DNA from: Isurus oxyrinchus
Taxonomy: Eukaryota
Assembly (NCBI GenBank): GCA_026770705.1
Contig: JANJGN010000007.1
Location: 108,996,001 to 109,060,000 of the forward strand
Length of the DNA: 64,000 bases
Direction: 5' to 3'
This document shows, one piece after another, positions 1 through 51,659 of this stretch (positions are counted from its first letter, which is position 1; every line of letters begins with the position of its first letter). A model generated the notes under the pieces. The model saw nothing but the letters and a program-made list of their open reading frames with translations. It searched no databases and was not told where the DNA came from. The position numbers were made by a program, and so were the translations under genes.

Positions 1-49
1 GGGAAAGAATTAGCCACTTGACCAAACCTTTTGCTTCTGGTCTTTGCAG

Positions 50-151
50 GGAGCAGCCGCTGAGACTGTGTGCTATGCTGCATGGAAATTCAGCAGAGCT
101 GGGAAAACTACAGGACATAAACGTGAAGAGGAGAGAAGCATGTGCGTTCAG
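50..151 (+). pseudogene. Penultimate (cytoplasmic) exon of an upstream paralogue of the VJ-C1 receptor; ITIM degenerate
   Basis: tctttgcag|GGA acceptor and CAG|gtagct donor. Translates GAAAETVCYAAWKFSRAGKTTGHKREEERSMCVQ, which aligns with exon 6 at 48438 (GAESDFVEYAALDLMKTPRRKREK). The following intron is also alignable. Confidence 0.8.
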
Positions 152-359
152 GTAGCTCTGAGCAACAGATGCAGAATCATAGATGATCAGGGTAACATCA
201 ACATTCATGAGATAAAGGAAGGCATTTTCTTTTGTTGGCTTTGATCGAGTGATGCATCGACGTTTATTTATTGCGTTCTTCGGATGGCCGTTTTGAGCAG
301 CAGAGCACAAAAATTGCAAAATGACAAATTAATAATATATCCAAATATTGGCTTCACAG

Positions 360-8500: not shown

Positions 8501-10590
8501 ATCTCAGACGGGAGAAGATGCCGTGTTTTACCGACTCATCGGAAGGCTATGGGCTACGATAATGCTTCACTCCCTAGTTCTTCTCTGAAGGATCAGCCTT
8601 GATTGATCAAGTGCCTGGAGTTGGGCTTACAACACGCGCTTACAGGAGGGAAAGTGTGCTACCACTAGGCCACGGCCGACCTTATACGTGCCCGGACCGA
8701 GGAGAGGGTTGCGGAAACCTTCGGGTATTTCCTGTTCTTGAAGCTTTCCTCTCAGTACATTGATCACTCATCCTATAATCTGCACAAATTCCCTCAAGAA
8801 ACGGATAGGTAATATGTGAATGTGTATAGTTCATCATTCGCCGCTGTTCTTATTTTCCCCGTATTAGTGTCTCTCATGCGCCAAAACAACCCATGAAATT
8901 AAAAATGTTCCCTTTGTTTGCATCAGCAATTGCGATGTTTCACCCACATTGCCAGCTGTATAAGTAATGCCAATACAATTATTCATGCCTGCAAAGTGAT
9001 TTACAGTCATGATTGGAATTAATTGAGAGAGTTTCTTTACGTCAATCATTCAATGCCCCTGCTGTTTATTGCTCGGGTTACAAGACGGGCGGCCGTTATG
9101 GTTTGGACTTCCTCTGTTCAGTGTGGGTTGTGAGGCTTTGACAATGCATTCTGAAGGTTGCGTCGGCTCGGCAACAGTGGGCATAGAAAGTCCGCAAAAA
9201 TTCATCTCCCATAAGCCAGCGGAATGCTTCAGCCATGCGCCTCCATTCACTTCGAAATAACGAAGTGGTACTGGAAAGTCAGGTTTCGATATTTGCTGCA
9301 AGGAACGATGTCAACTGTGAACATAATTGGCAAATGAACAAGTTGCAGTATAAGGGGAATAGTTACATAGCGATTAGTAATTGTCAGACTGAAAGAGTGT
9401 TTGATGAATATTCCAGACCCACCTCCAAACGGGAATTGAATAAATATTAAAGGTAAAATCAGTAGGCTTTTGGGGAGAAGCAGGGATGTGAGATTATTCT
9501 CCAGCTATTCCGAAGGGCAGGCAAAGCGCGATATTCGATTCTATGTTTCAATATTCTACAGATTCTTTTTTTCTTTATCATCCACATCGACCTGCATAGC
9601 AGTCTGTTTACTATCATAGCCGCCCTGAAATCGCATCTCCTTTCGGAATGCTTTGCTAAAGGTGAACAAATTCTAAATTCCAGAATAGACCTGATATCAA
9701 CTTTCTCCTTCGACTTTTCAGCAGATCCCCGAAATCAAGGAAAGACAGTTCCCCACGCATCTGAAATTAACCTGTCCGGGTTTTTTTTTGACTGCTCCCT
9801 TTGAAATCACTTCACTTAATTCCGGTAGACTGACTGTCACTTAAAACAAAAATAATGGAAGGGTTGGCACTGGAATACCACGAAACAGCTAATCGGGGAT
9901 AGGATGCATGGAATTTCCAGTTCCTTTGAAGAGGCATAGTCTGTACAGACAGTAATTTCTGTCTGGGTTTTCGCGTGAGCTTCCAGTTTCCAGCCATGCG
10001 AATTTCATAAGATCACAAGACTATTAAAATATTTGCAAGAGTAGGCCATTCTGCCCCTAAAGACACCATTCAATAAGCTCATGACTGATCTGATTGTGGC
10101 CTGAACTCCACTTTCCTGCTTTCCCCTCACAACACTTGAGTCCCTTGTCGATCAAAAGTCTTTCAAACTCAGCGTTGAATATATTCAGTGACCCAGCCAC
10201 CACTGCTCCCTGGGAGGAGAATTCCACGTACCAACGGTCCGCTGAGAAAATAAATTCCTCTCAATCCCCACCTTAAATGGGAGACTCGTTATTTATATGT
10301 TGATTCTCATAGGTCTACATTCTCCCACAAGGCGCATCGACCCTGACAAGCCTCCGCACCCCGCACCCCCGCCACCCCCCGCCACCTCCGCCAGAATCTT
10401 ATGTTTCAATAAGATCGCCTCGCATTCTTTTAAACACCAATGTGCATGGGACTAATCTGCTCAATCTCATTTTAAGGCAATTCCTTCATCCAAAGAATCA
10501 ACTTAGTGAACTTCTTCCAAAGGAAGTATATATCTGCTTAAGTAAGCAGAACAAAACTGTACACAATGCACTAGATACTGTCTCACCAAT

Positions 10591-23066: not shown

Positions 23067-26000
23067 CTTTTAACACAATCTGAGAGAGATAATTTAATTT
23101 TTTTAAAACGTAAATTAGTAACAATTTATGGTAATGGGGCATAGCAATCATAAATATTTAATGCACTTTTAATAGCAATTAGAGAGATCATTTTGGTAGT
23201 TGAGGGATGCTATTGCAGGAACAAAACCTCTCCTGAGCAATTTTATTCAGAAAGTACCAGCGAAATCTTCCATTCCTGAGGTGTTGTTCTAACCAACACT
23301 TAATTAAGCATGAAAATCTCTCCCTCTGTCTCCTCGGGTGAATCCTGAAATCATCCTATTCCATATGGAGTTCTTCTGCTCCACTGATCAACACTCAAAA
23401 GAGCGCAACAGAGTCCAGACGATCTGCAGAAACATCTCGTTTTAATCATTAATAATCTGAGAATTTCGTGTTTTGTGTTTCATTAAAAAAAAGCGCTCGT
23501 GTTGTCTATTTTCTGTTATCAGTGAATATTGAGAAGACAGATTCTGCCAACATGTGCAGAATGCATCAAAACATGAGGGTTCTCTACTAACACTGCCTAA
23601 AATATGCTGTTAATCGTACAGATTGGAATTTATGCATTAACATTGATTGTACAACACCTTAGTTTCCGTGGTGAAGAATTCAAGTCGCGTTAATTTCAGC
23701 AAAGTAACTTTCTTCAGCGCGGGAACCAAGTGCTGGAATGTTACCACGTCATAAAAGGCTTATATTGGCAAGTTACGGGGTGTAGATTTTTTAAGAATCC
23801 ATACATCGAGGAAACTAAATCGGAGTTCATACTTGACGTAATTTCAGGCACTTGGTGAATTGAGTTTTGCGGCCTCAAGCAAGTTATCAGTGGGGAAAAG
23901 TGCACGAAATATGGTATGGACATGGGAACAGGAGTTGGCCATCTGTCCCCTCGTACCTGGCCCACCATCAATTAGATCATGGCTGCCATGTACCTCAAAG
24001 CAATTTGTCCAGTTTATCCCCATAATCCTTGATAGCCATTCCGAATGAAAATTGATCCATCCCAAAACTGAGAACTCGAATTGGCAATTTGGTGAGAAGG
24101 AACCTATCTCAACCTATTTATTAATTTCAGTCCAAGATTTAAGCATATGTACTATTTCAGTATCTTGCTTCAATAATAATGTTATCTGCATTCGGGAAAC
24201 ACTCATTGGATGAAACACTTCGAAATCGCATGATACTAATGAAGCAAATGACATTGACCTTGGGCCGTAGCGCATAACGCGTGATTGTAAATTGGGAGCT
24301 GATGCACTCCGTGTTCAATGGAAACGAAATTCCGAAGGTGCATAAATGGAATTTGGTATCACCAGTTTTAGCTCATCGATATTAAGGTCAAATTGCATAT
24401 ATCACACAGCTCAAAATTCGTCACGCCCGCTGCAATGACGGTTAGTACACAATACGTTGGCAACAATTAGCACAGCTAACAGATTTGTGACAATGTTCTA
24501 TTTTGCTATAATGCACTTGAGAATCGGTAGCACTAGCACGTAGAACATCAAATGAACTACTTCATTAATTCTTTAACACCAGCTCTCTTTCCGATATCGA
24601 TAAATATTTCGCTGTCGCAGTTCCAGCAAGAAAGATAGGGTATATGGAAACAATTACACCTCTGGCAACTCTCTGGAGTATTGGAGATTGATCTGATTTA
24701 TTTTAAACTACTTCAAAAGATTATCAGAAAAATAAACAAAATTGCTGATACAATGTGTATATTTTTCAAAACAAATATTAAAACATCATTTAAAGGGAAT
24801 CAAGAAAACTAACCGAATTAATAGCGCAATCAGAAAAATGGAAGAAACGAAGTTCAAGTTACGTGACGAATTTTGTTGCATTCGCCTTTTTCGCGAAGCA
24901 TGAAGCTGCAACGTAAACAAACCCAGCTCTGTAAAGAATGCGCTACAAGGTATGCGCAGAAGCAATGAACTTACCCTATTCTCAGTGCCGGACATCAAAC
25001 CTCGCAAATATTGCTCAAAATCATCAATCCCCTAGGATGCAGAAGCCACGGATTTAGACATAGGTAATGCATCCAATTGTACAATGTTTAGTGATGCATT
25101 TCCTTTATTAAGCCAAATTATACCAATAGGATTGACAATAGCATCTGTGATCGGAACTAGCTCGGTTTCGAATGAAAGCATAGGGAACGATATGTTTTTT
25201 TTTGCCGAAATCAACCCTGTTTCTGTTCGTTACTGGGCCCTGTTTCATAAACCGGTCCTAAAGTTGATTGGTGTTGAACGATAATTAATTTGGTGAGTAC
25301 AGCTGGAGGAGTGCTTCTTTCCGGTAATAGTGTGAAAGGGACATCCTAAACACAGAGTAAAGAATTGGAATGTGCTGTAGTTCTGGCGAGATCCTAAGAG
25401 CATTGGAAAAGACACTCCAGTATGAGAGGTGAGGGTCAGGCTAATATTGTGGGCAGGAAGCCGTGCAGACTCACTGTTTCATACACGTGCAGCTCTCTTG
25501 CGCCAAAACACGCAATCTTTAAGTTCCTGTAACATAACTGCGTTCAGATTGCAATTCTCCATAGGCACAAACGCTGAGGAAACTCCGAGATGTGAGAGCT
25601 GATTTCTTGTTTGAGTGTGTGCGTTTGTGTGTGTGTGGTGATAAAACTCTGGTAATTGCCCGAGTCGTCGTTTTGTTCAGTCGTTTCCTACAGCACACTT
25701 TGACCAACGTCATAAAATTATCCGTGCATTGAATGCTGATGCACATTATGCCAACCTATCGAGTTCGCTATGTTAATGTGATTAAGTACGGGTGCAACAA
25801 TGCAGTAACTAACATTCTACTGTAAATGAGAGGAGCTTGTTTGTCAGATCCATGATTGTGCAAATATAACAAAATGCTGGTCTTCGTCCATGATGGTACC
25901 GTACCGCATATACTGGCTTGCCTGCGTCATCCTTTTTAACCCACTTGTATTATCTCCCATCGGCGTTGAAGCTTACAAATGAGAAAATGCATTGAGAGGA

Positions 26001-42642: not shown

Positions 42643-43399
42643 ACTCCTGCTGCAATCTTTCTCACCTGGCGAAAATTTCTAAAAACTCAAGGGTGTTATT
42701 GCCAACAAATATGAACCATCCTGTCAACGACCTCTGGTGCCTCCTTCTTTCCACTTGCGCGCCAGACCAAATCTCTCCTTCGCGTTCTACCACATCCTTA
42801 AAAGTCTCTTACTCAGGACCTTTTCTTTTTCCCCCAAAAAACCCTCTAAACACATCTTATCCAAGAACCAGTTCCTCTTCCAGAGGCTCTATGGGAAACG
42901 AACAACTGGTCATCAACATTTATCAGGTCCCATGATAGCATGTTAAGCGACTGTTTCTCTAAAGACTCTACGTCCCTGGAAACCATTATTGTCTCTCTGC
43001 AATAAACTCACATTCGCCCGCTCTCCCCTTACAAACTTGCACCACACCTCCAACCTCCTAGTCGCCCCTGAAGGCAGCGAAGTTGTTATTGGAGCAAAAA
43101 TCCTGTTTCAGTTTCTGCACTTAGTTCTCGAATCCACACACAATACATAACAGTGCAAAATCTGCCGTGAATTACTGTATCTGTGAATATTATCATGGTG
43201 CGTAACCTCACCTCATTTTTAGGTTCTCAACCTCTCTGCAGCCTTTGATAAGCCCAGGAAATCACGATTCGTCGGCCCTTCACCGCTGATCTCCACCCTG
43301 GTTAGACTACCGTTGTTTGCGGGGAAACAACACTGACTCGGTGAGTGATAGCAAATTCAGCATTGGAAAATCAACATTTTCCCCCACACCTTGCTGTCC

Positions 43400-43606
43400 G
43401 TAACATGTGTGGTTCCATATGTTCAATAATTGAAGAGGTTTTTTTTAAATCGCACTGAACTAACGAAGCTGAATTTCTCAACCCACAATTGCCGGATGTC
43501 AATTGTCATTGCGACGTCTCTGATAGGAAACTAACCGGAAATCCTTTTAAACAGTTGCAAGCTCGCAGTTACTGCAGAGAGTCAACAGTTGGATCCATTT
43601 TTAAGA
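43400..43606 (+). promoter_or_regulatory. Putative proximal promoter / 5' UTR of the VJ-C1 receptor
   Basis: RUNX TGTGGTT 43408-43414, ETS CCGGATGT 43492-43499 and ACCGGAAAT 43534-43542, GATA-like TGATAG 43521, and E-boxes CAGTTG just upstream of the ATG. Confidence 0.5.
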
Positions 43607-43661
43607 ATGACAACGTGTTTGGCATTTCTGTGCCTGATCTTCCGAGGGAGCTTTGACACAG
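43607..43661 (+). CDS. Exon 1, signal peptide MTTCLAFLCLIFRGSFDT
   Basis: agaATGa start, hydrophobic core, phase-1 donor G|gtaccg. Confidence 0.85.
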
Positions 43662-46600
43662 GTACCGGTTTATTCATTTGCTCAGTTACTCTAAACTGCT
43701 TCGGAAGGTTTTTTCATATTCATTTAACAAACCGCATTTCCTCTGTCTTGATTATGTTTTCCCCTTCCACCTTCGTGTATTAGCTAATACTGCTAACCTA
43801 TGTTTGACTATATTTCTGACAGCTGAGTGCCACACTTCGATCCGTGTGTCTCAAGCACCACATAAAGCGAATGTATCCAGAGGCGAGAATGTCACATTCT
43901 ACTGCATATTCCCCATTCTTCAAGACCAAGCCAGGGCACGGGTATTATGGTGGAAACATGGTGAGAATGAATACCTGGACAGAAACGCGGAGAAGAGAAG
44001 GAGGTTTGGTATGGAAAGCAAAGTGAGCGGTTTCTTTCAGTTATTGGACGCGAAATTACAAGACTCAGGAATTTATTACTGCTCCGTGATCCGTCGGGGA
44101 GTAGTTCGAGGAAATGGAACAGGATCACATCTAATTGTGCACGGTAAGTTTGGAACACAGGAAAGCAAAACCGGCATAAATATATCAAACACAACAATCG
44201 GGAATGTGCATCTTTTCTGTCAGTAAAAACGTAGTTATTAATACATTTCGCGATGTTATTTGTATATTCGTGTTCTCCATATGAAATGCTAAATATACAA
44301 ACAATGCCACGCGCAGAGTAGCGAATACCTAGCAATATAATCAAATATAGCATAACTATAAAGGCAATTTGTGCACCAAATTTATATAAGCTGCAACTCG
44401 GAATAAATTCTTAACATATAACTGACTGAAAATCTTATACATGAATGCGCCTTTCCCAACATTTACATGCCTATTAGCCTGGCTTTGTTAGTCTACCTGC
44501 CGCCATGAAGATTAATGTCCCTGAAACTAAATCTAACGTCATGATAGCGTTCGGATTTCAATGTCAATCTGCAGCTAACCCTTGACCAACAAATTCATTA
44601 AAGAGCTGGGGTTTGAAACATATAAGGTTGTCACCTCTCCTCTCAAACTTTTCAATAAATAAAACAATACAGAGATGCTGTGTTGCTGAAACCTCCTGAG
44701 GTTCAACTGAATATAATTCATTTAATCAATGGTCTTGATATGGATCTGAGATATTCGGGCATCGTTAAAGTTCTCCTTTAATCATCAAAAATACGCTTAC
44801 TTTTCGACATTGTCTTTCACTGCACATTAAACAGTGAAGATTCAGCGAGCCGACTTGCCCACCAAGGTTTAATTCCGCAGACGATGTAAACCAAACATTG
44901 GTTAGCCAATTATGCCGTTGGCGGGCCAAGGAATTCAAAGTCTTGACAGCCTGCTAAAGTCGACAGAATGGCGGTCTTTATGAGAGTTCTATATGATTTA
45001 GGCACAGGTGATGTGTGTAACAGTAGAAGGACAGGAAGCTGGAATTGTAATTTACCCGACTGCAAGAAAATAGGCCCAAAGTAAATCATAACTATATTTA
45101 ATTTATCCAAGTAGCGTACAGTAGCTCAACCTTGTTCATCTGTGTTCACAGCGACCCCAGCCCCACTAAGAATTGTCCCCAGGACATCTGAATGGAATTC
45201 ATCTACTGTTTTGACTCTGGTCTGTTATACGGCTGCCTTTTATCCAGCAAATGTCACCCTCACGTGGTATGAAAATGGTATCGAGACTACATTCGGAATA
45301 AACACCAGTAAAGTGCAGAACTCTGAGGGACTGTATGAAGTTTCTAGCTCTTTGGCTGAGACGCAGCCTGCCCGGAGCGACGCGAATTATACTTGCTTGG
45401 TCTTCCATAGCACCCTCAATACTCCAGCTGTTGTCACGTACAAGGTTTTTAAATCTAACCAAGGTAGGAGACCAACATTTCAAGAAGGAGAACCAGCTAC
45501 TGTTGAATTCATAGAGTCATACGTCATACGCTATGTGCATATTGAGAATCATGAAACTGTTCTACGGAAATCTGATGGGAAATATCAATGACATCTTTAA
45601 AATCTTGTCTTTACAGTGAACTGAATGTGATGTTTTGCAAAACCTGGTTGTACCTCCAGGCACACAAATATACTTGGTCAAACCGAAGTTATTTCCAAAT
45701 TCTTTTATTTCTTACGTAACAATATTAAATATCACCATTTATTTTTTAGTCTCATATTTCCTCACCTAAACGTTATGAATATTTTCATTTTCTATTTTCC
45801 CATGTTAAAAGTAGTTTCTTCTGACCATTGCCGACTCATCTTGCAGGAAGACCATCATCAGGAGCTGCAGACATGTTATTTGCGCACGAAAGCCTTGCGA
45901 AATAATTTCCGATATTGCCTCATGTTCGGCTACTTCCAGTGGAAAGTTTTGAACTAACCATCTGGCCAACTTCTCCTCCTCACCGCCCACAACGGGTTTA
46001 ACTGGGATGGGTCTCATATGGTTGCAGCATATTCGGTTCAATGCAGCATGTTGTTGACGACTCCCTGCATAGTGAGACGAATCAATGATACATTTTTTCA
46101 TTTACTTAAGGGTTGTAGGCGTCGATGCCTGGTCCACCATTTCTTGCTCATTCCTAATTGACCTTGAACGGAGTGGCTTTCAGGACATTTCAGAGGGCAG
46201 TTAAGAGTCAACCACGTCGTTGCTGATGCCCGTTTATATCCAATGGCAGCAATATTTTACGAGCAGCTGGTGACGTAGTGGTCATGTCTCTGGACTAGTA
46301 ATGCAGAGGCCTAGGATAATGCTGCTCGAAAAATACATACTTCAAAGCTAGTTTTAGTGATGTGCCATGACACTATAATCAATGGCCATAAAAAAAAACA
46401 TTTGGTTCACTAAAGGCATTCAGGGAAGGAAATCTGTCATCCTTTCCCGGTCTGGCTCCAGACCCACTGCAATGCGTTGAGATCCTTAAAAGGGTAGGGA
46501 TCTTCACAGATTAATCAGAAATGCGTCATCTTTTCGAGGAGAAAGCAAGTGCAGATATTTTAGCTAAAAATAACATTTTGTATTTAAATATTCTTGCTCG

Positions 46601-48891
46601 TTTTGAATACTGAGGTGTTAGTGAGAACAGCACTATAGTTTAAACAATACACTATCCTAGAACTTATTTTTAACTGAACATTCGTCAAAACATAATATTG
46701 CAATTAACCTTGCAGGTATTGTCCAGAAGTCACTCTACTATTGGATTCCAGTGTATGTGGTGCTTGGATTCGCGCTCCTGTTGTTTATGAGCGTCATTGG
46801 AGGACGGTACCGAATGCAGAAGAATGAAGGTAAGATCTGCTGTGAACCCTTGATTTTTTGCATAAAACCTCAGGAGGAATGACAGTTACCGGTAACACAG
46901 GAATAAAAGGGAAGCCGATAAGGAGTTAAAGTTGAAAACACTCTTAATGTTTTCAGGGAGCATCGATTGTTGAAAATATGCCTTGTAATATATAGAATTC
47001 TAATAAAAATTTAAACTATTATCTAGATGTTTATAAAGATATTTTTCCTTTGCAAAATGCTAAACGAAAGGCACCTTGGCACGCAATCACTTTCCAAACC
47101 ATTACGTGTTGGAAGCGCAATTGGCATGATGTGCGGCTTCCGCCGGTAATGGTTGTAGAGAACAAAAACAGAATTACCTGGAAAAACTCAGCAGGTCTGG
47201 CAGCATCGGCGGAGAAGAAAACAGTTGACGTTTCGAGTCCTCATGACCCTTCGACAGAACTTGTAGACAGAACTCTTTTCTTCTCCGCCGATGCTGCCAG
47301 ACCTGCTGAGTTTTTCCAGGTAATTCTGTTTTTGTTTTGGATTTCCAGCATCCGCAGTTTTCTTTGTTTTTATAATGGTTGTACAGGTTGATACATGAGA
47401 AACAGGAGCAGGATCAGGTCATACAACTCCCCGAGCCTGCTCCACCATCATGGCTGATGTTCGGCACTCTTCAGCTGCATTTCGATGTCCTTTGATTCCT
47501 GCAGCATCCGAAATATTAACTTAGTTTGCGCGAAATATTCAAAACATAATCTACTGCTGCTTGGAGTTCAAAACCTTTCCGCACAGGTCAAAGCTGAAAA
47601 CGCATGTTGGGCTTTTTATAACTATAGACATATCTTTGTAATGTTTGAGATGAAAAATAAGTTTAAAAATACTGAAAATGCTGCGGGAGCGAGTAGGGTG
47701 GTGGTGGGTGGGGGCGGGGGGTGAGGTGGGTGCGGTTGGGGAGGGGGTCTCAGCAGGTCTGGCAACATCTTTGGAGAGATAAATGCGGTTAGTGTTTCGA
47801 GTCCCTATGCCTCTTCATCAGTGATTATTTCGATATTAAATTTTATTTCTTCCCAGGTAAACAAGAACATTTAACAGGCAGAGACCGTCGCGAGGAGCTG
47901 GTGCGTTGATTCATCGACAGTTTGTTGAATTATCAAAGAAGATTGATATAATGGAAAGTTAATATCACCATCAGATCAGACCAGTTTAAATACATTTATT
48001 AAAAGTATTTGCCCGATCTGAGAGAGATAGTCAAGTCAGATATAGAAATTTATTTGCCACCTAGTCCGTTGCTGGCAAACATTGGTAAATGCTTAGAAAA
48101 TAAAACCACCTATTTCGTTGAAAATGTACCTGGTTAACAACTATCCATAAATGTATCTATCCTTTTGGAATCGAAAATGAATTTTACGTATTGAGACTGC
48201 TGTCCATTTAAACATTCCTGTAAGGCTTCTATCGAGTAAACATTGGCAGGTTTAAATAGTTGGTATAGTAGCCACAGGCTCTTAATATTCGAACTTATGT
48301 AACGATCAATGCATTATCGTTTGCGCACTTCAGCTCGAGCCCAGGTTAACCTGTTCAATGCTTGAGCAGCGCCACGCAAACTGGTGAACATAATGAACCA
48401 GCTAGGTAACTAGAATTTTTACTTATGGTCCATTCAGGGAGCAGAGTCCGACTTTGTGGAATATGCGGCATTAGACTTGATGAAAACTCCAAGGCGCAAA
48501 CGTGAAAAGGTGAGTATGTTTAGGTAGGGCCGAGTAATATATCAGATAAACAAATATCACCAATATAACATCAACGGTCGTGTGATAGGCAGGGAAAATG
48601 TTTCTGTTGATTTTGACCGTACGTTGTCTCTAAGGTTATTATGTGTCCTTCTGATGAATGTTTTGAACAGGTTCCAGAGAACTTGCAAAACGGCAAATAA
48701 ACAATATTTTCAAACTGACCTTACAGACCCAACAATGCATAGCCGGTGCCGATCTGCTGTACGCGAGTGTAACACAAACAGGCCCAGGCAGAGGTAAAAC
48801 TAACGAAAGAAGTACGGAGTATGCAGAGCTGCGGATAAAAACACAAGGTGGAGTAAGAGAGGCTGTCTATACAGAAGCAAAAATCAACTAG
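43607..48891 (+). CDS. Ig-superfamily type I receptor: leader-V(J)-C1-TM-ITIM tail (NKp30/NCR3-like V, SIRP-like tail), ~360 aa, 7 exons: join(43607-43661,43823-44143,45152-45463,46716-46829,47857-47900,48438-48509,48727-48891)
   Basis: All introns are GT-AG with phases 1,1,1,1,0,0 and give one open frame of 1083 nt; canonical V and C1 motifs, a hydrophobic TM and tyrosine motifs are present. Confidence 0.9.
43823..44143 (+). CDS. Exon 2, V-set Ig domain with in-exon J-like G strand
   Basis: ttctgacag| ... VSQAP..VSRGENVTFYC..VLWWK..QLLDAKLQDSGIYYC..RGNGTGSHLIVH G|gtaagt; 321 nt. Confidence 0.95.
45152..45463 (+). CDS. Exon 3, C1-set Ig domain
   Basis: ttcacag| TLVCYTAAFYPANVTLTWYENG..NSEGLYEVSSSL..YTCLVFHSTL ..G|gtagga; 312 nt. 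Confidence 0.95.
46716..46829 (+). CDS. Exon 4, transmembrane
   Basis: cttgcag| GIVQKSLYYWIPVYVVLGFALLLFMSVIGGRYRMQKNE G|gtaaga; no charged residue in the helix. Confidence 0.9.
47161..47372. mobile_element. Young palindromic Penelope-derived element in intron 4, with TSD
   Basis: ~60-bp perfect inverted arms (47162-47221 / 47277-47336); TSD taatggttgta(g/c)ag at 47147-47160 and 47373-47386. Confidence 0.9.
47857..47900 (+). CDS. Exon 5, cytoplasmic GKQEHLTGRDRREEL
   Basis: tttcttcccag| ... CTG|gtgcgt; bridges phase 1 to phase 0. Confidence 0.8.
48438..48509 (+). CDS. Exon 6, cytoplasmic, ITIM VEYAAL
   Basis: cattcag| GAESDFVEYAALDLMKTPRRKREK |gtgagt. Confidence 0.88.
48727..48891 (+). CDS. 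Exon 7, cytoplasmic, with LLYASV, TEYAEL, AVYTEA and stop
   Basis: cttacag| TQQCIAGADLLYASVTQTGPGRGKTNERSTEYAELRIKTQGGVREAVYTEAKIN*; the acceptor is conserved in the paralogue at 360. Confidence 0.82.
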   Translation, partial: TQQCIAGADLLYASVTQTGPGRGKTNERSTEYAELRIKTQGGVREAVYTEAKIN

Positions 48892-49184
48892 CAATTGAAT
48901 TTAAACGCTGGAGTCGTTTTGCAGTCTGTTCTGATCGCTTCGCTCTGCTGTACCGTTTCCAGATGTATATGTATTGTGGGATAACATGTCTATCAGAAAA
49001 TTCAGTCCATAGTAGTCACTTGCTATTCAATTATTTGAAGTTTCATTTTCGCTGGTTTGATGAAAAACATAACTTTCGTGGCAAATTTTCAGGATGAATC
49101 TGTATCTTTAAAAATAATGCCACATCTTTTCCTTCGACCACAATGGTACGCTAATGGCACCTAATTATCTGTATACCAGAATTT

Positions 49185-49190
49185 AATAAA
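49185..49190 (+). terminator. Polyadenylation signal AATAAA
   Basis: First AATAAA ~295 nt after the stop codon. Confidence 0.6.
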
Positions 49191-51659
49191 ATCTATTATG
49201 TAGAATGTCTTACAAATCAGTAATTAGTGCTCATTTTGTACAGTAACACTGCAAAACCTGTATGTTGATTTATTTGTCCGCTTACTGCATTCTGGCCTCC
49301 AGTATATCTGAGGTCCCTGATGCCAAACGGGTGAAGCTGAAGTCCATGTACTTGTCCGACAACCTACTGAAAGTAGTTTCAAGTTGTTGCGGGATCTACA
49401 AATATATATCTCCATATGTGAACACGTAGAATCATGGAATCCTACAGCTGAGAAGGAAACTGTAGGGCCCATTTTACCAGTGCTAACCATTTGAAAAGGC
49501 GATCCAATTATTCCCACACTTGGTTCTTTCCCTAGATCTAAGCAATTATCTCCTTTTCAAATATACATCGAATACCATTATGAAATGTAATCCATGTATT
49601 CTTCTTCCAAGCGTCATTATTGGATAACGCTAGGCTTCATTTTCTTGTTCACTTCAATGCAAGCGCCATTTGCTGCTCTACCTTTCTGTTTTGCCTTTGC
49701 TGTTTCTTCAAATATTTCTACAGAGGAAGTCAAGCAGATCTGCTTTTTTGAAATCCGTGGAGATATAACTTGTTTAGCTCAGCTTATTACAAGAACTTTC
49801 ACCCCGAAAGAGAGGGATCCCTCAAAATGTAAATAAATGCGCAACGGTTAAATTGTCATGATCTTTCAGCTAACCTAATTTTTGATTTTCTTCACTTAAA
49901 AACAATACGTTGAATAGTGGCATATCTATTTACGGCATGGAAAAGATCATTGTGTTGGCGGCTTATCAGTTCTGATTAAATGTAGACCATTAGCTCAGGT
50001 TTGTAACCGTTTAGTTTTAGCTACACTTATGTGTTACTAAATATTGACATGGCCAAATTGCTTATTCGAGTTTGGCAGAGGAAATGGTTCACTCGCCCTT
50101 CTCGAAATATTAACAGGTCATTTAGTTCTAAATTTTGCAACATATCGTGGGCGTATCCAGTGTTAAATAGCAGCAATTGTTTCGCATCGCATGTTTGAAT
50201 GTAATTAAAGCAACACTTCAGCGTTCAAAAGGATTTTCTATTTTACATCTGTCAGTGTAAATTTCCAAGCCACACTGTTGTAGCAAGTTGAAATTATTCG
50301 TCTCATGGCGGTTGTGCCACTATTACTCCACCAACTTTCATATATTACTGAAAACATTTTCCTAATTACATTGTCTGTTCCTTTCTTATTGATGCATACA
50401 CAAGCTTTAGTAAATTTAAGTTTAGATCTCCCAGACGTAATGCAATTTCATGTCCTAAAGTACTGTAGCGTTGATCTCATTGATTCAAAAATTGCAGCTT
50501 CTGCATTTTGTCTAAAATCGGCCAATAATACCCATTTCATGCAAATTCTCCATTATTCTAATCATTTTGGAAGAAGTTCGCTCGTTAAGGTTGTTCCTGT
50601 CCTCGTGTTGTATATCACAGAAATGGAGTTTGGAGACGATGAAGAAACAGGTTTGCAAAATTATATTCTGTAGCGTTGTTTTGCCGCACCGTTCCAATCA
50701 CATCCGGACATTGAGAAGAGCCAATACATGCCGATTTGTAAACTCGCAGACAAGGGACTTTCATTATGAATTCTTGCTGCCGGACATAATCCAACTGGCA
50801 GATTCATATCATAAAAAGTGGAGAGATATTTCCCGCTAAAACATTGAGGGAATACATAAGCTCTGTTGCGAAGTTTGCATTCCCTTTAGGGCAGACGCTA
50901 ATGATTATTGTACAGGTGGTTCAAAAGGTTGTGTGCAAACACCTGCACTAGCATACCGATTAGCCATGGCAAATAAAAGGCAGCGGTGGATATTTATTGA
51001 TATAGCATCCAACTTTGAATGCCAGTGAGACCATACCGTGGCTCTCTGCCTATAGGCAGATTTGCAGATTAGTCTTTAGCTAGTAATAAACAAATATGTG
51101 CAATGGAAGTGAATAAAAACGCAATTTTGAATTCCAAATTTATCAGCAGCATCGCAGACTCTAATGATTTACTCCAGAAAAATCCCGGAAGGTTGAAATG
51201 GCCGCTGCATCCCAACATTGGGTGTGAACAATCAAACCTGTCTATGATTCCTTCCTGCCAACAGCAACACTGCTAACACTCAAATTAGGGATTCGCAGGT
51301 GAATAATGAGTGAGTTTGGGCTCCAACGTGCAGCCAGCACCCTCGCAACGATATTACATTGTGAGTAAACACTTTGACGACAGCAGGAGACACAATAGAG
51401 GGTTTGTTTGGAATTAAGCAACCTGAATATTTAAATTGCTTTGTAAAATGTTTCACTTTTGTTGGCAATGAGGGTCAATATTCAAATTTTCCTGTTGTTA
51501 ACATTTCCGCTCTCTTTCCTCCGTGAAGACAGCGACTTACTGTTTGAGCCCCAACAGGTCCTTCAATCCTTAATGCTACCGCCTATTTTCTTCTCTTCAC
51601 CATTTAGTTGACAATCGCAACAGCACACATAACACAAACAGGGAAACAATTAAATCTGA

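What the first reader, a model, noticed from the sequence alone, without database searches (positions are those of the whole stretch)
43607..48891. Non-rearranging VJ-C1 'antigen-receptor-shaped' inhibitory receptor in a shark-like genome
Seen: an intact 7-exon gene with one V exon, one C1 exon, an uncharged TM and a multi-tyrosine tail. Established: V+C1 is the ectodomain plan of Ig light and TCR chains, and C1 domains are limited to a few gnathostome families (Ig, TCR, MHC, B2M, tapasin, SIRP, B7H6). NKp30/NCR3 has a similar V but no C1 and signals through a charged TM residue. Inference: this gene combines an NKp30-like V, one C1 and a SIRP-alpha-like tail, so it may belong to a poorly characterised chondrichthyan inhibitory receptor family resembling the hypothesised pre-RAG VJ-C1 ancestor of antigen receptors. 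I cannot tell from sequence alone whether the family is already named.
Basis: partly seen in the sequence, partly recalled or inferred. Interest (0 to 1): 0.9.

Follow-up and report, generated by a model that had tools for sequence, protein, structure and literature searches.

The report
Intact shark SIRP-like inhibitory receptor gene
This is an intact shark gene for a cell-surface immune "brake" shaped like an antibody light chain, one ordinary member of a large, unnamed family found in sharks, rays and chimaeras that public annotations already hold under inconsistent names.

Summary
The seven-exon gene is real and intact. It has a leader, a single-exon V domain with a built-in J motif (GTGSHLIV), one C1 domain, an uncharged membrane anchor, and a tail with two ITIMs and one ITSM-like motif. 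It encodes 360 aa, all introns are GT-AG, and no RSS is present. Two exon borders needed a one-base correction.

Every exon aligns colinearly with annotated proteins of Heptranchias, Heterodontus, Mustelus and Scyliorhinus (65-69% identity in V and C1). The gene belongs to a multigene family that, among the named hits, appears only in cartilaginous fish. NCBI labels its members inconsistently: SIRP-alpha-like, tapasin-related-like, NCR3LG1-like or lambda-like.

The "NKp30-like V" reading is not supported. NKp30 is not among the best solved matches. Shark NCR3 genes sit in the MHC, and this family appears to lie on other chromosomes.

By profile, the ectodomain is about equally close to Ig light chains and SIRP-alpha. 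SIRP is the best functional analogue, but orthology is unproven.

No RNA data were reachable. This scan had already met the same family 11.5-12.5 Mb upstream on the same piece and on other pieces. Relics of family copies also lie in this window.

Best reading: an inhibitory member of a paired-receptor family. The pre-RAG-relic idea remains untested.

The parts
43607..43661 (+). Exon 1: ATG and signal peptide (MTTCLAFLCLIFRGSFDT plus the first base of an Ala codon); phase-1 donor
   Evidence: The leader aligns with the leaders of P0163, P0162 and P0164 (M..s..FLCL..RG).
43823..44143 (+). Exon 2: V-set domain with a germline-joined J-like G strand (GNGTGSHLIVH). It has three N-glycosylation sequons and an extra Cys at residue 2 of the exon.
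   Evidence: Pfam V-set E=2.8e-7. 64-69% identical to P0162, P0002, P0001 and P0163. No RSS heptamer.
45152..45463 (+). Exon 3: C1-set domain (LTLVCYTAAFYP...TWYENG...GLYEVSSSL...YTCLVFH) plus the start of the stalk
   Evidence: Pfam C1-set E=1.3e-13. 65-69% identical to P0162, P0163 and P0002.
46716..46829 (+). Exon 4: stalk, uncharged transmembrane helix and basic stop-transfer stretch (RYRMQKNE); phase-1 donor
   Evidence: Aligns with the TM exons of P0167, P0176 and P0164.
47857..47900 (+). Exon 5: 44-nt cytoplasmic exon ((G)KQEHLTGRDRREEL)
   Evidence: Aligns with GKQGRVMGPTRHEEL of P0163.
48438..48509 (+). Exon 6: first ITIM (VEYAAL) and a basic stretch. The donor is AAG|GTGAGT. Read-through stops after 5 codons, and a relic of the orthologues' ERTVYAQNK motif follows (GRVIYQINK).
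   Evidence: P0162 shows the same short form (KREE|IQRR...).
48727..48891 (+). Exon 7: second ITIM (LLYASV), ITSM-like TEYAEL, conserved C-terminal AVYTEAKIN, and the stop codon
   Evidence: 56% identical to the tail of P0002 and 47% to that of P0163.
49185..49190 (+). AATAAA polyadenylation signal about 295 nt after the stop
   Evidence: pattern only.
41..172 (+). Relic of a family tail exon from a copy lying upstream of the window. The motif residues are altered (VCYAAW; SMCVQV where orthologues have TVYAQ).
   Evidence: tblastn with P0162, P0177 and P0163.
9707..9951 (+). Family C1-like pseudo-exon with in-frame stops
   Evidence: P0165, P0041, P0021.
24433..24597 (-). Family V-like pseudo-exon with in-frame stops. 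A weaker C1-like trace follows at 24099-24299 (-).
   Evidence: P0103 at E=9e-5; P0020; P0034.

Best explanation
The locus is an intact gene for a type I membrane glycoprotein of a multigene family seen so far only in cartilaginous fish. The family plan is V(J)-C1-TM-tail. Shown: a germline-joined V domain that cannot rearrange, one C1 domain, an uncharged membrane anchor, and a tail with two ITIM consensus motifs (VEYAAL, LLYASV), one ITSM-like motif (TEYAEL) and a conserved terminal tyrosine. Also shown: colinear orthologues in sharks and rays, and family members with short tails and charged transmembrane residues. Inferred: the V domain binds an unknown ligand on cells or microbes. The tail tyrosines are then phosphorylated by Src-family kinases and recruit SHP-1/SHP-2-type phosphatases, which dampens activation of the leukocyte that carries the receptor. 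This is how SIRP-alpha and other ITIM receptors work. The gene would be the inhibitory arm of a paired inhibitory/activating family that evolves by birth and death. It works like SIRP-alpha; whether it is a SIRP orthologue is open.
For: Gene anatomy. A phmmer search of the V exon against 1.84 billion representatives gave 81 hits below 1e-10, and most of the single-V hits carry V plus C1 in the same order. Every hit that was named and carries V plus C1 comes from sharks, rays or chimaera. All seven exons align colinearly with P0163, P0167, P0162, P0173 and P0002, including the tail motifs. The V and C1 trees put the window gene in the same sub-family together with Mustelus, Scyliorhinus, Heterodontus, Heptranchias, Stegostoma and ray proteins (V clade SH-aLRT 97; C1 clade 84). 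This sub-family therefore predates the shark-ray split. Many members carry 2-5 ITIM/ITSM motifs. Others have short tails and R...(D/N)H in the TM: P0171, P0129, P0195, P0119 and P0099. A family profile aligns SIRP-alpha d1-d2 in one V-C1 stretch (65.0 bits), and SIRP-alpha d3 is the best single C1 match (47.9 bits). An AlphaFold model of orthologue P0002 has pLDDT above 90 across V and C1, and its best fold matches are V-C1 light chains.
Against: There is no expression evidence. The only runs that hold the stretch are DNA; their contigs cover the introns. The window also holds decayed family copies, so this copy could be recently silenced. The ancestral long form of exon 6 is broken by a stop, so the model depends on the upstream donor at 48510. 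Annotated P0162 has the same short form. Ligand, phosphatase binding and cell type are all inferred from motifs. The similarity to SIRP is no greater than the similarity to Ig light chains (68.0 and 67.9 bits).
Confidence: 0.7

Rival explanations
1. It is the cartilaginous-fish orthologue (or co-orthologue) of SIRP-alpha itself: a myeloid 'self' sensor that binds CD47.
For: NCBI most often names the relatives 'tyrosine-protein phosphatase non-receptor type substrate 1-like'. SIRP-alpha and SIRP-gamma rank 5th and 23rd of 11,090 solved matches to the family profile. SIRP-alpha d3 is the best single C1 match. The tail motifs (xxYAxLDL, TEYAxL) resemble my recollection of SIRP-alpha's tail. The family also has paired charged-TM members.
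Against: It has one C1 domain, not two. The V-only profile does not bring any SIRP V domain into the best 60 solved matches; NAR, TCR-alpha, TCR-delta and CD79b V domains score best. The V-C1 score to SIRP-alpha equals that to kappa and lambda chains. The family is large and expands by lineage. ITIM tails are prone to convergence.
Confidence: 0.15
2. It is an unexpressed or recently dead copy. The reading frame is intact only because little time has passed since silencing, in an array that turns over by birth and death.
For: Three decayed family relics lie in the same 64 kb. An earlier follow-up found two pseudogene copies 11.8 Mb upstream (s1-300789). The long form of exon 6 is interrupted by a stop. 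No RNA evidence exists.
Against: 360 codons over seven exons have no stop or frameshift. All six splice sites are consensus. All hallmark residues of V and C1 and the tail motifs are kept. Exon 7 stays open for 54 codons after the alternative donor, and the short exon-6 form is annotated in Heterodontus.
Confidence: 0.15
3. It is a member of the NKp30 (NCR3) family that has gained a C1 domain and an inhibitory tail.
For: It has a VJ-type V domain with a GxG J motif. Some relatives are auto-named after the NKp30 ligand.
Against: NKp30 structures are not among the best 60 solved matches for the exon or for the V profile. NCR3-labelled genes of white shark and sawfish are MHC class III genes between AIF1 and DDAH2. 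No 'SHPS-1-like' name occurs in the held text of the sawfish MHC chromosome table, a file that was cut when stored. Scan notes place NKp30-type genes of this genome on another piece (not checked).
Confidence: 0.03
4. It is a surviving non-rearranging descendant of the pre-RAG VJ-C1 receptor. It would be sister to Ig/TCR and would pair through its C1 domain as homo- or heterodimers, like antigen-receptor chains.
For: It has a single-exon VJ followed by C1, the plan sought as the RAG target (PMC12227049). V-C1 profile scores to light chains are the highest for any two-domain stretch. The best single-V matches are NAR and TCR V domains. C1 domains are said always to pair with another domain (PMC2785349).
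Against: No tree with outgroups could be built here. UrIg2 scores lower than SIRP-alpha and IgL. The stalk has no cysteine for an interchain bond. The family appears unlinked to the MHC. A descent from SIRP or from a light chain after RAG explains the data equally well.
Confidence: 0.1

Closest known systems
SIRP family (SIRP-alpha / SHPS-1, SIRP-beta, SIRP-gamma)
   Same: N-terminal V domain with a J-like strand, followed directly by C1-set domain(s). A type I membrane protein whose tail has several ITIM-type tyrosines. Relatives include short-tailed members with a charged TM. One profile alignment spans SIRP-alpha d1-d2 (65 bits), and d3 is the best single C1 match. Published as a possible link to antigen-receptor evolution (PMC2785349).
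   Different: One C1 domain instead of two. The V domain is not specifically SIRP-like. The family is large and, so far, seen only in cartilaginous fish. Orthology, synteny and CD47 binding are untested.
Ig light chains and TCR chains
   Same: V-C1 ectodomain. The J motif GxG(T/S)xLxV sits at the end of V. These give the best two-domain profile scores (kappa 68.0, lambda 67.9 bits) and the best fold matches.
   Different: V and J are in one exon with no RSS, so there is no rearrangement. The gene has its own long ITIM tail and an uncharged TM instead of signalling through CD79/CD3.
UrIg / UrIg2 (non-rearranging shark Ig-like genes; PMC12227049, PDB 9dmx)
   Same: Non-rearranging single-exon VJ followed by C1-set domains, in cartilaginous fish. 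UrIg2 is the top whole-chain match for the C1 exon and the C1 profile.
   Different: UrIg2 has V-C1-C2-C3, forms antibody-like dimers, and is linked to the MHC or the antigen-receptor complex. This gene has a single C1, a TM and an ITIM tail. Its V-C1 stretch score is lower (55.8 bits).
NKp30 (NCR3)
   Same: Non-rearranging VJ-type V domain on a type I membrane protein.
   Different: From established knowledge, NKp30 has no C1 domain, a charged TM residue and no ITIM tail. Shark NCR3 genes are MHC class III genes. NKp30 is not among the best solved matches.
[quoted passage not shown] 2019, cited in PMC10751288)
   Same: Non-rearranging VJ genes with inhibitory-type tails. This is from my memory of the abstract only.
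   Different: Could not be compared. The paper is not held and no PRARP sequence was available. PMC10751288 describes PRARP as a VJ gene in the MHC, and this family does not appear to be MHC-linked.

Membership tests
Cartilaginous-fish V-C1 'SHPS-1-like' family (unnamed; RefSeq models such as XP_078066559, XP_038661932, XP_007902824) | Colinear leader, VJ, C1, TM and tyrosine-motif tail, with high identity to annotated members | tested here: met
   V and C1 are 65-69% identical to P0162, P0163 and P0002. All seven exons align in order. The V and C1 trees are congruent.
SIRP | V-set domain followed by two C1-set domains (V-C1-C1) | tested here: not met
   There is one C1 exon only. No second C1 lies between 45463 and the TM exon. 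The orthologues also have one C1.
SIRP | Sequence closer to SIRP than to other V-C1 proteins | tested here: inconclusive
   Family-profile V-C1 stretch scores: SIRP-alpha 65.0, kappa 68.0, lambda 67.9 bits. SIRP-alpha d3 is the best single C1 at 47.9 bits. No SIRP V domain is in the top 60 of the V-only profile. No tree with SIRP references was possible.
SIRP | ITIM tail that recruits SHP-1/SHP-2 (SIRP-alpha type) | tested here: inconclusive
   The motifs VEYAAL, LLYASV and TEYAEL are present. Phosphatase binding cannot be tested with these tools.
SIRP | Conserved synteny with the SIRP locus, and binding of CD47 | not tested
The window holds no other recognisable gene.
NKp30 / NCR3 | Single V domain without a C domain, and a charged TM residue that couples to ITAM adaptors | tested here: not met
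   A C1 exon is present. The TM has no charged residue. The tail carries ITIMs.
NKp30 / NCR3 | MHC class III location next to AIF1 and DDAH2 | tested here: inconclusive
   NCR3-labelled genes of white shark and sawfish lie there. Relatives of this gene lie on chromosomes of 193.5 Mb (white shark) and 198.8 Mb (catshark). MHC chromosome coordinates end near 116 and 163 Mb. The window's own chromosome was not identified.
Rearranging antigen receptors (IgL, TCR) | Separate V and J segments flanked by RSS | tested here: not met
   V and J are in one exon that ends at a splice donor. No CACAGTG or CACTGTG occurs in 43001-49500.
UrIg / UrIg2 | VJ exon followed by several C domains (C1-C2-C3), antibody-like | tested here: not met
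   There is a single C1 followed by a TM and an ITIM tail. The V-C1 stretch scores 55.8 bits, below IgL and SIRP-alpha.
PRARP | Sequence and synteny as defined by Fu et al. 2019 | not testable with these tools
   The paper is not held and no reference sequence was available.

The most novel reading that the evidence does not exclude
The family is not a SIRP offshoot. It is an independent surviving lineage of the non-rearranging VJ-C1 receptor that preceded Ig and TCR, it pairs through its C1 domains, and it already had inhibitory and charged-TM (activating) versions. That would make the paired-receptor logic older than RAG-based rearrangement.
Probability: 0.1. Interest if true: 0.85.

Novelty: new member of a known kind. 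Interest (0 to 1): 0.45.

Why it matters
Single-exon VJ genes joined to C1 domains are actively sought as clues to the gene the RAG transposon invaded (PMC12227049), and SIRP has been argued to be such a link (PMC2785349). This gene shows that sharks, rays and chimaeras carry a large, old family with exactly that ectodomain plan. The family has both inhibitory and charged-TM members, appears to lie outside the MHC, and hides under inconsistent automatic names. I found no paper on it in the library I could search. A proper phylogeny and synteny study would show whether SIRP-type receptors date to the origin of jawed vertebrates. The single gene in this window is an ordinary intact member and adds little beyond that.

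Tried and rejected
RNA evidence: the look-up of sequencing runs listed no RNA holder. The four runs I laid are DNA: their contigs cover the introns and are about 97-98% identical. The six junctions therefore remain untested.

Dimerisation: complex prediction on two copies of the P0002 ectodomain (residues 55-262) returned no verdict. This is neither support nor evidence against pairing.

Fold search: Foldseek against the PDB returned only antibody light chains with near-equal E-values, so it cannot discriminate between families.

Other genes in the window: Pfam on the ten longest other open frames found nothing.

Family search: the word-indexed search with the family alignment did not reach tetrapod SIRP, IgL or TCR. 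No reference sequences were therefore available for a rooted tree.

Papers: Flajnik 2012 (NKp30/B7H6), Flajnik 2023 (UrIg), Ohta and Flajnik 2015, and Fu 2019 (PRARP) are not held. Statements about them rest on citing papers or on memory and are marked as such.

Each exon was sent by reference, and full-length public orthologues stood in for the whole protein.

Full report
**Observation.** The region 43607-48891 (+) holds a seven-exon gene. I translated each exon by reference and checked every border.
- Exon 1 is 43607-43661, the signal peptide.
- Exon 2 is 43823-44143, the V domain.
- Exon 3 is 45152-45463, the C1 domain.
- Exon 4 is 46716-46829, the stalk and TM.
- Exons 5, 6 and 7 are 47857-47900, 48438-48509 and 48727-48891, the tail.

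All six introns are GT-AG. The phases fit (1, 1, 1, 1, 0, 0). The CDS is 1083 nt, i.e. 360 aa plus stop. The exon 4/5 borders I first inferred were off by one base each; the protein is unchanged because the split codon is G|GT.

Pfam calls exon 2 V-set (E=2.8e-7) and exon 3 C1-set (E=1.3e-13). The V exon runs without interruption into a J-like strand, GTGSHLIV, which fits GxG(T/S)xLxV. It ends at a splice donor, and no RSS heptamer occurs anywhere in 43001-49500. The gene therefore cannot rearrange.

The TM has no charged residue. The tail has two ITIM consensus motifs (VEYAAL, LLYASV), an ITSM-like TEYAEL and a terminal AVYTEA. An AATAAA follows at 49185.

**Relatives.** A full HMMER scan of 1.84 billion representatives with the V exon gave 81 hits below 1e-10. 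Local BLAST showed that most of the single-V hits carry a V followed by a C1 matching exon 3, and many end in multi-ITIM tails.

Every V-plus-C1 hit that I could name comes from a shark, ray or chimaera. The genera are Scyliorhinus, Mustelus, Heterodontus, Heptranchias, Carcharodon, Cetorhinus, Rhincodon, Stegostoma, Chiloscyllium, Hemiscyllium, Pristis, Mobula, Hypanus, Hemitrygon, Narcine and Callorhinchus.

NCBI's automatic names disagree: SIRP-alpha-like (SHPS-1-like), SIRP-beta-1-like, tapasin-related-like, NCR3 ligand 1-like, CD276 homolog, lambda light chain-like and MHC class II beta-like. Within each species the members share one chromosome (same calls).

The nearest non-chondrichthyan V matches are reptile proteins with several V domains and no C1. 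One teleost protein has V and C1.

**Support for the gene model.** All seven window exons align colinearly with P0163 and P0167 (Heptranchias), P0162 and P0173 (Heterodontus) and P0002 (Mustelus). This includes the 15-residue exon 5 and the tail motifs.

The V and C1 trees put the window gene in the same sub-family with shark and ray proteins (V clade SH-aLRT 97; C1 clade 84). The two domains have therefore travelled together since before the shark-ray split.

There is one blemish. In orthologues exon 6 continues through ERTVYAQ. In the window that extension is cut by a TAG five codons after 48509, followed by the relic GRVIYQINK. The model therefore relies on the consensus donor AAG|GTGAGT at 48510. 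Annotated P0162 has the same short form, and exon 7 remains open and conserved.

**Which known family.**
- A profile of 40 family sequences against all PDB chains aligned kappa (68.0 bits), lambda (67.9) and SIRP-alpha d1-d2 (65.0) as single V-C1 stretches. UrIg2 scored 55.8 and VH-CH1 about 48-50. SIRP-alpha d3 was the best lone C1 at 47.9.
- A C1-only profile again put UrIg2, IgM, IgL and SIRP-alpha/gamma on top. MHC, beta-2-microglobulin and tapasin did not reach the top 60.
- A V-only profile favoured NAR, TCR-alpha, TCR-delta and CD79b V domains among single-V chains. Neither NKp30 nor SIRP V domains reached the best 60. The exon alone did not reach NKp30 either.
- An AlphaFold model of P0002 is confident over V and C1, and its fold matches are light chains.

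The ectodomain is thus a generic antigen-receptor/SIRP-type V-C1. SIRP is the best functional analogue but not a demonstrated orthologue. SIRP has two C1 domains; this family has one.

**NKp30 and the MHC.** The supplement of PMC10751288 labels five white shark genes and three sawfish genes as NCR3. They lie in MHC class III between AIF1 and DDAH2. The held text of the sawfish MHC chromosome table, a file that was cut when stored, shows no 'SHPS-1-like' name.

Relatives of the window gene lie on a 193.5-Mb white shark chromosome and a 198.8-Mb catshark chromosome. The MHC chromosomes' listed coordinates end near 116 and 163 Mb. Unchecked notes of this scan place NKp30-type genes of this genome on another piece. 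The NKp30 reading is therefore not supported. I could not establish linkage to an MHC paralogon.

**Context.** The window also holds three decayed family pieces: a tail-exon relic at 41-172 (+), a C1 pseudo-exon at 9707-9951 (+) and a V pseudo-exon at 24433-24597 (-). I found no other recognisable gene.

Earlier notes of this scan describe the same family 11.5-12.5 Mb upstream on the same piece and on other pieces. One follow-up reached the same 'SIRP-like family under inconsistent names' conclusion for two dead copies. The scan has therefore met this family before on other DNA. What is new here is an intact copy.

The family includes short-tailed members with R...(D/N)H in the TM. This suggests paired activating partners.

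**Mechanism.** Shown: the domain plan, the motifs, conservation, and membership of a paired, expanding family. Inferred: ligand binding by the V domain, tyrosine phosphorylation, recruitment of SHP-type phosphatases, and inhibition of the carrying leukocyte.

**What could not be done.**
- No RNA run holds the stretch. The four runs I laid are DNA.
- The dimer prediction gave no verdict.
- The joined protein was never searched or folded.
- I found no paper naming this family, but key subscription papers are not held.

Noticed in passing
window 47147-47372: A 226-bp palindromic, MITE-like element lies in intron 4 and is flanked by the direct repeat TAATGGTTGTA. The DNA contigs of all four runs skip exactly this stretch. 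Its sequence is extremely abundant in those runs (summed word depth up to about 4 million).
   Followed up: partly
window 41-172 (+): A relic of a family tail exon lies at the window's start (…VCYAAWKFSRAGKTTGHKREEERSMCVQV). The ITIM +3 Leu is replaced by Trp, and the second motif's Tyr is replaced by Cys. The rest of that copy lies upstream of the window.
   Followed up: partly
window 9707-9951 (+) and 24099-24597 (-): C1-like and V-like pseudo-exons of the same family, with in-frame stops. These are signs of birth-and-death turnover around the intact gene.
   Followed up: partly
window 48510-48560 (+): Just past the exon 6 donor the frame hits TAG and then reads GRVIYQINK. This is a relic of the ERTVYAQNK motif that orthologues keep inside this exon. 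The gene has lost one of the family's tyrosine motifs.
   Followed up: yes
window 43825-43830 (+) and 46718-46829 (+): The mature N-terminus has a Cys (AECHTS) where orthologues have Asp. Conversely, the Cys that orthologues carry at the start of the TM (for example LGCAMGGL) is absent here. Whether either affects pairing is unknown.
   Followed up: no
family proteins P0171, P0129, P0195, P0119, P0099, P0165: These are short-tailed family members with an Arg at the outer edge and Asp/Asn-His at the inner edge of the TM. They are candidate activating partners that would need an adaptor.
   Followed up: partly
family proteins P0010, P0017, P0064, P0090, P0100, P0139: These are V-TM-ITIM forms without the C1 domain. 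Some are isoforms of V-C1 genes (P0064/P0063, P0090/P0091), so the C1 exon seems to be skipped in some annotated transcripts.
   Followed up: no
proteins P0044, P0180-P0188, P0203: The closest V domains outside cartilaginous fish are turtle and lizard proteins with 3-6 tandem V domains and ITIM tails. A Coregonus protein has V followed by C1. Neither was explored.
   Followed up: no
Read-laying runs X1, X2, X3, X5 on window 45326-49300: The DNA contigs of organism A differ from the window at about 2-2.5% of intronic positions. Of the differences shown (40 of 76), none falls in the covered part of exon 3 (45326-45463). Organism A is either a close species or a divergent haplotype.
   Followed up: no
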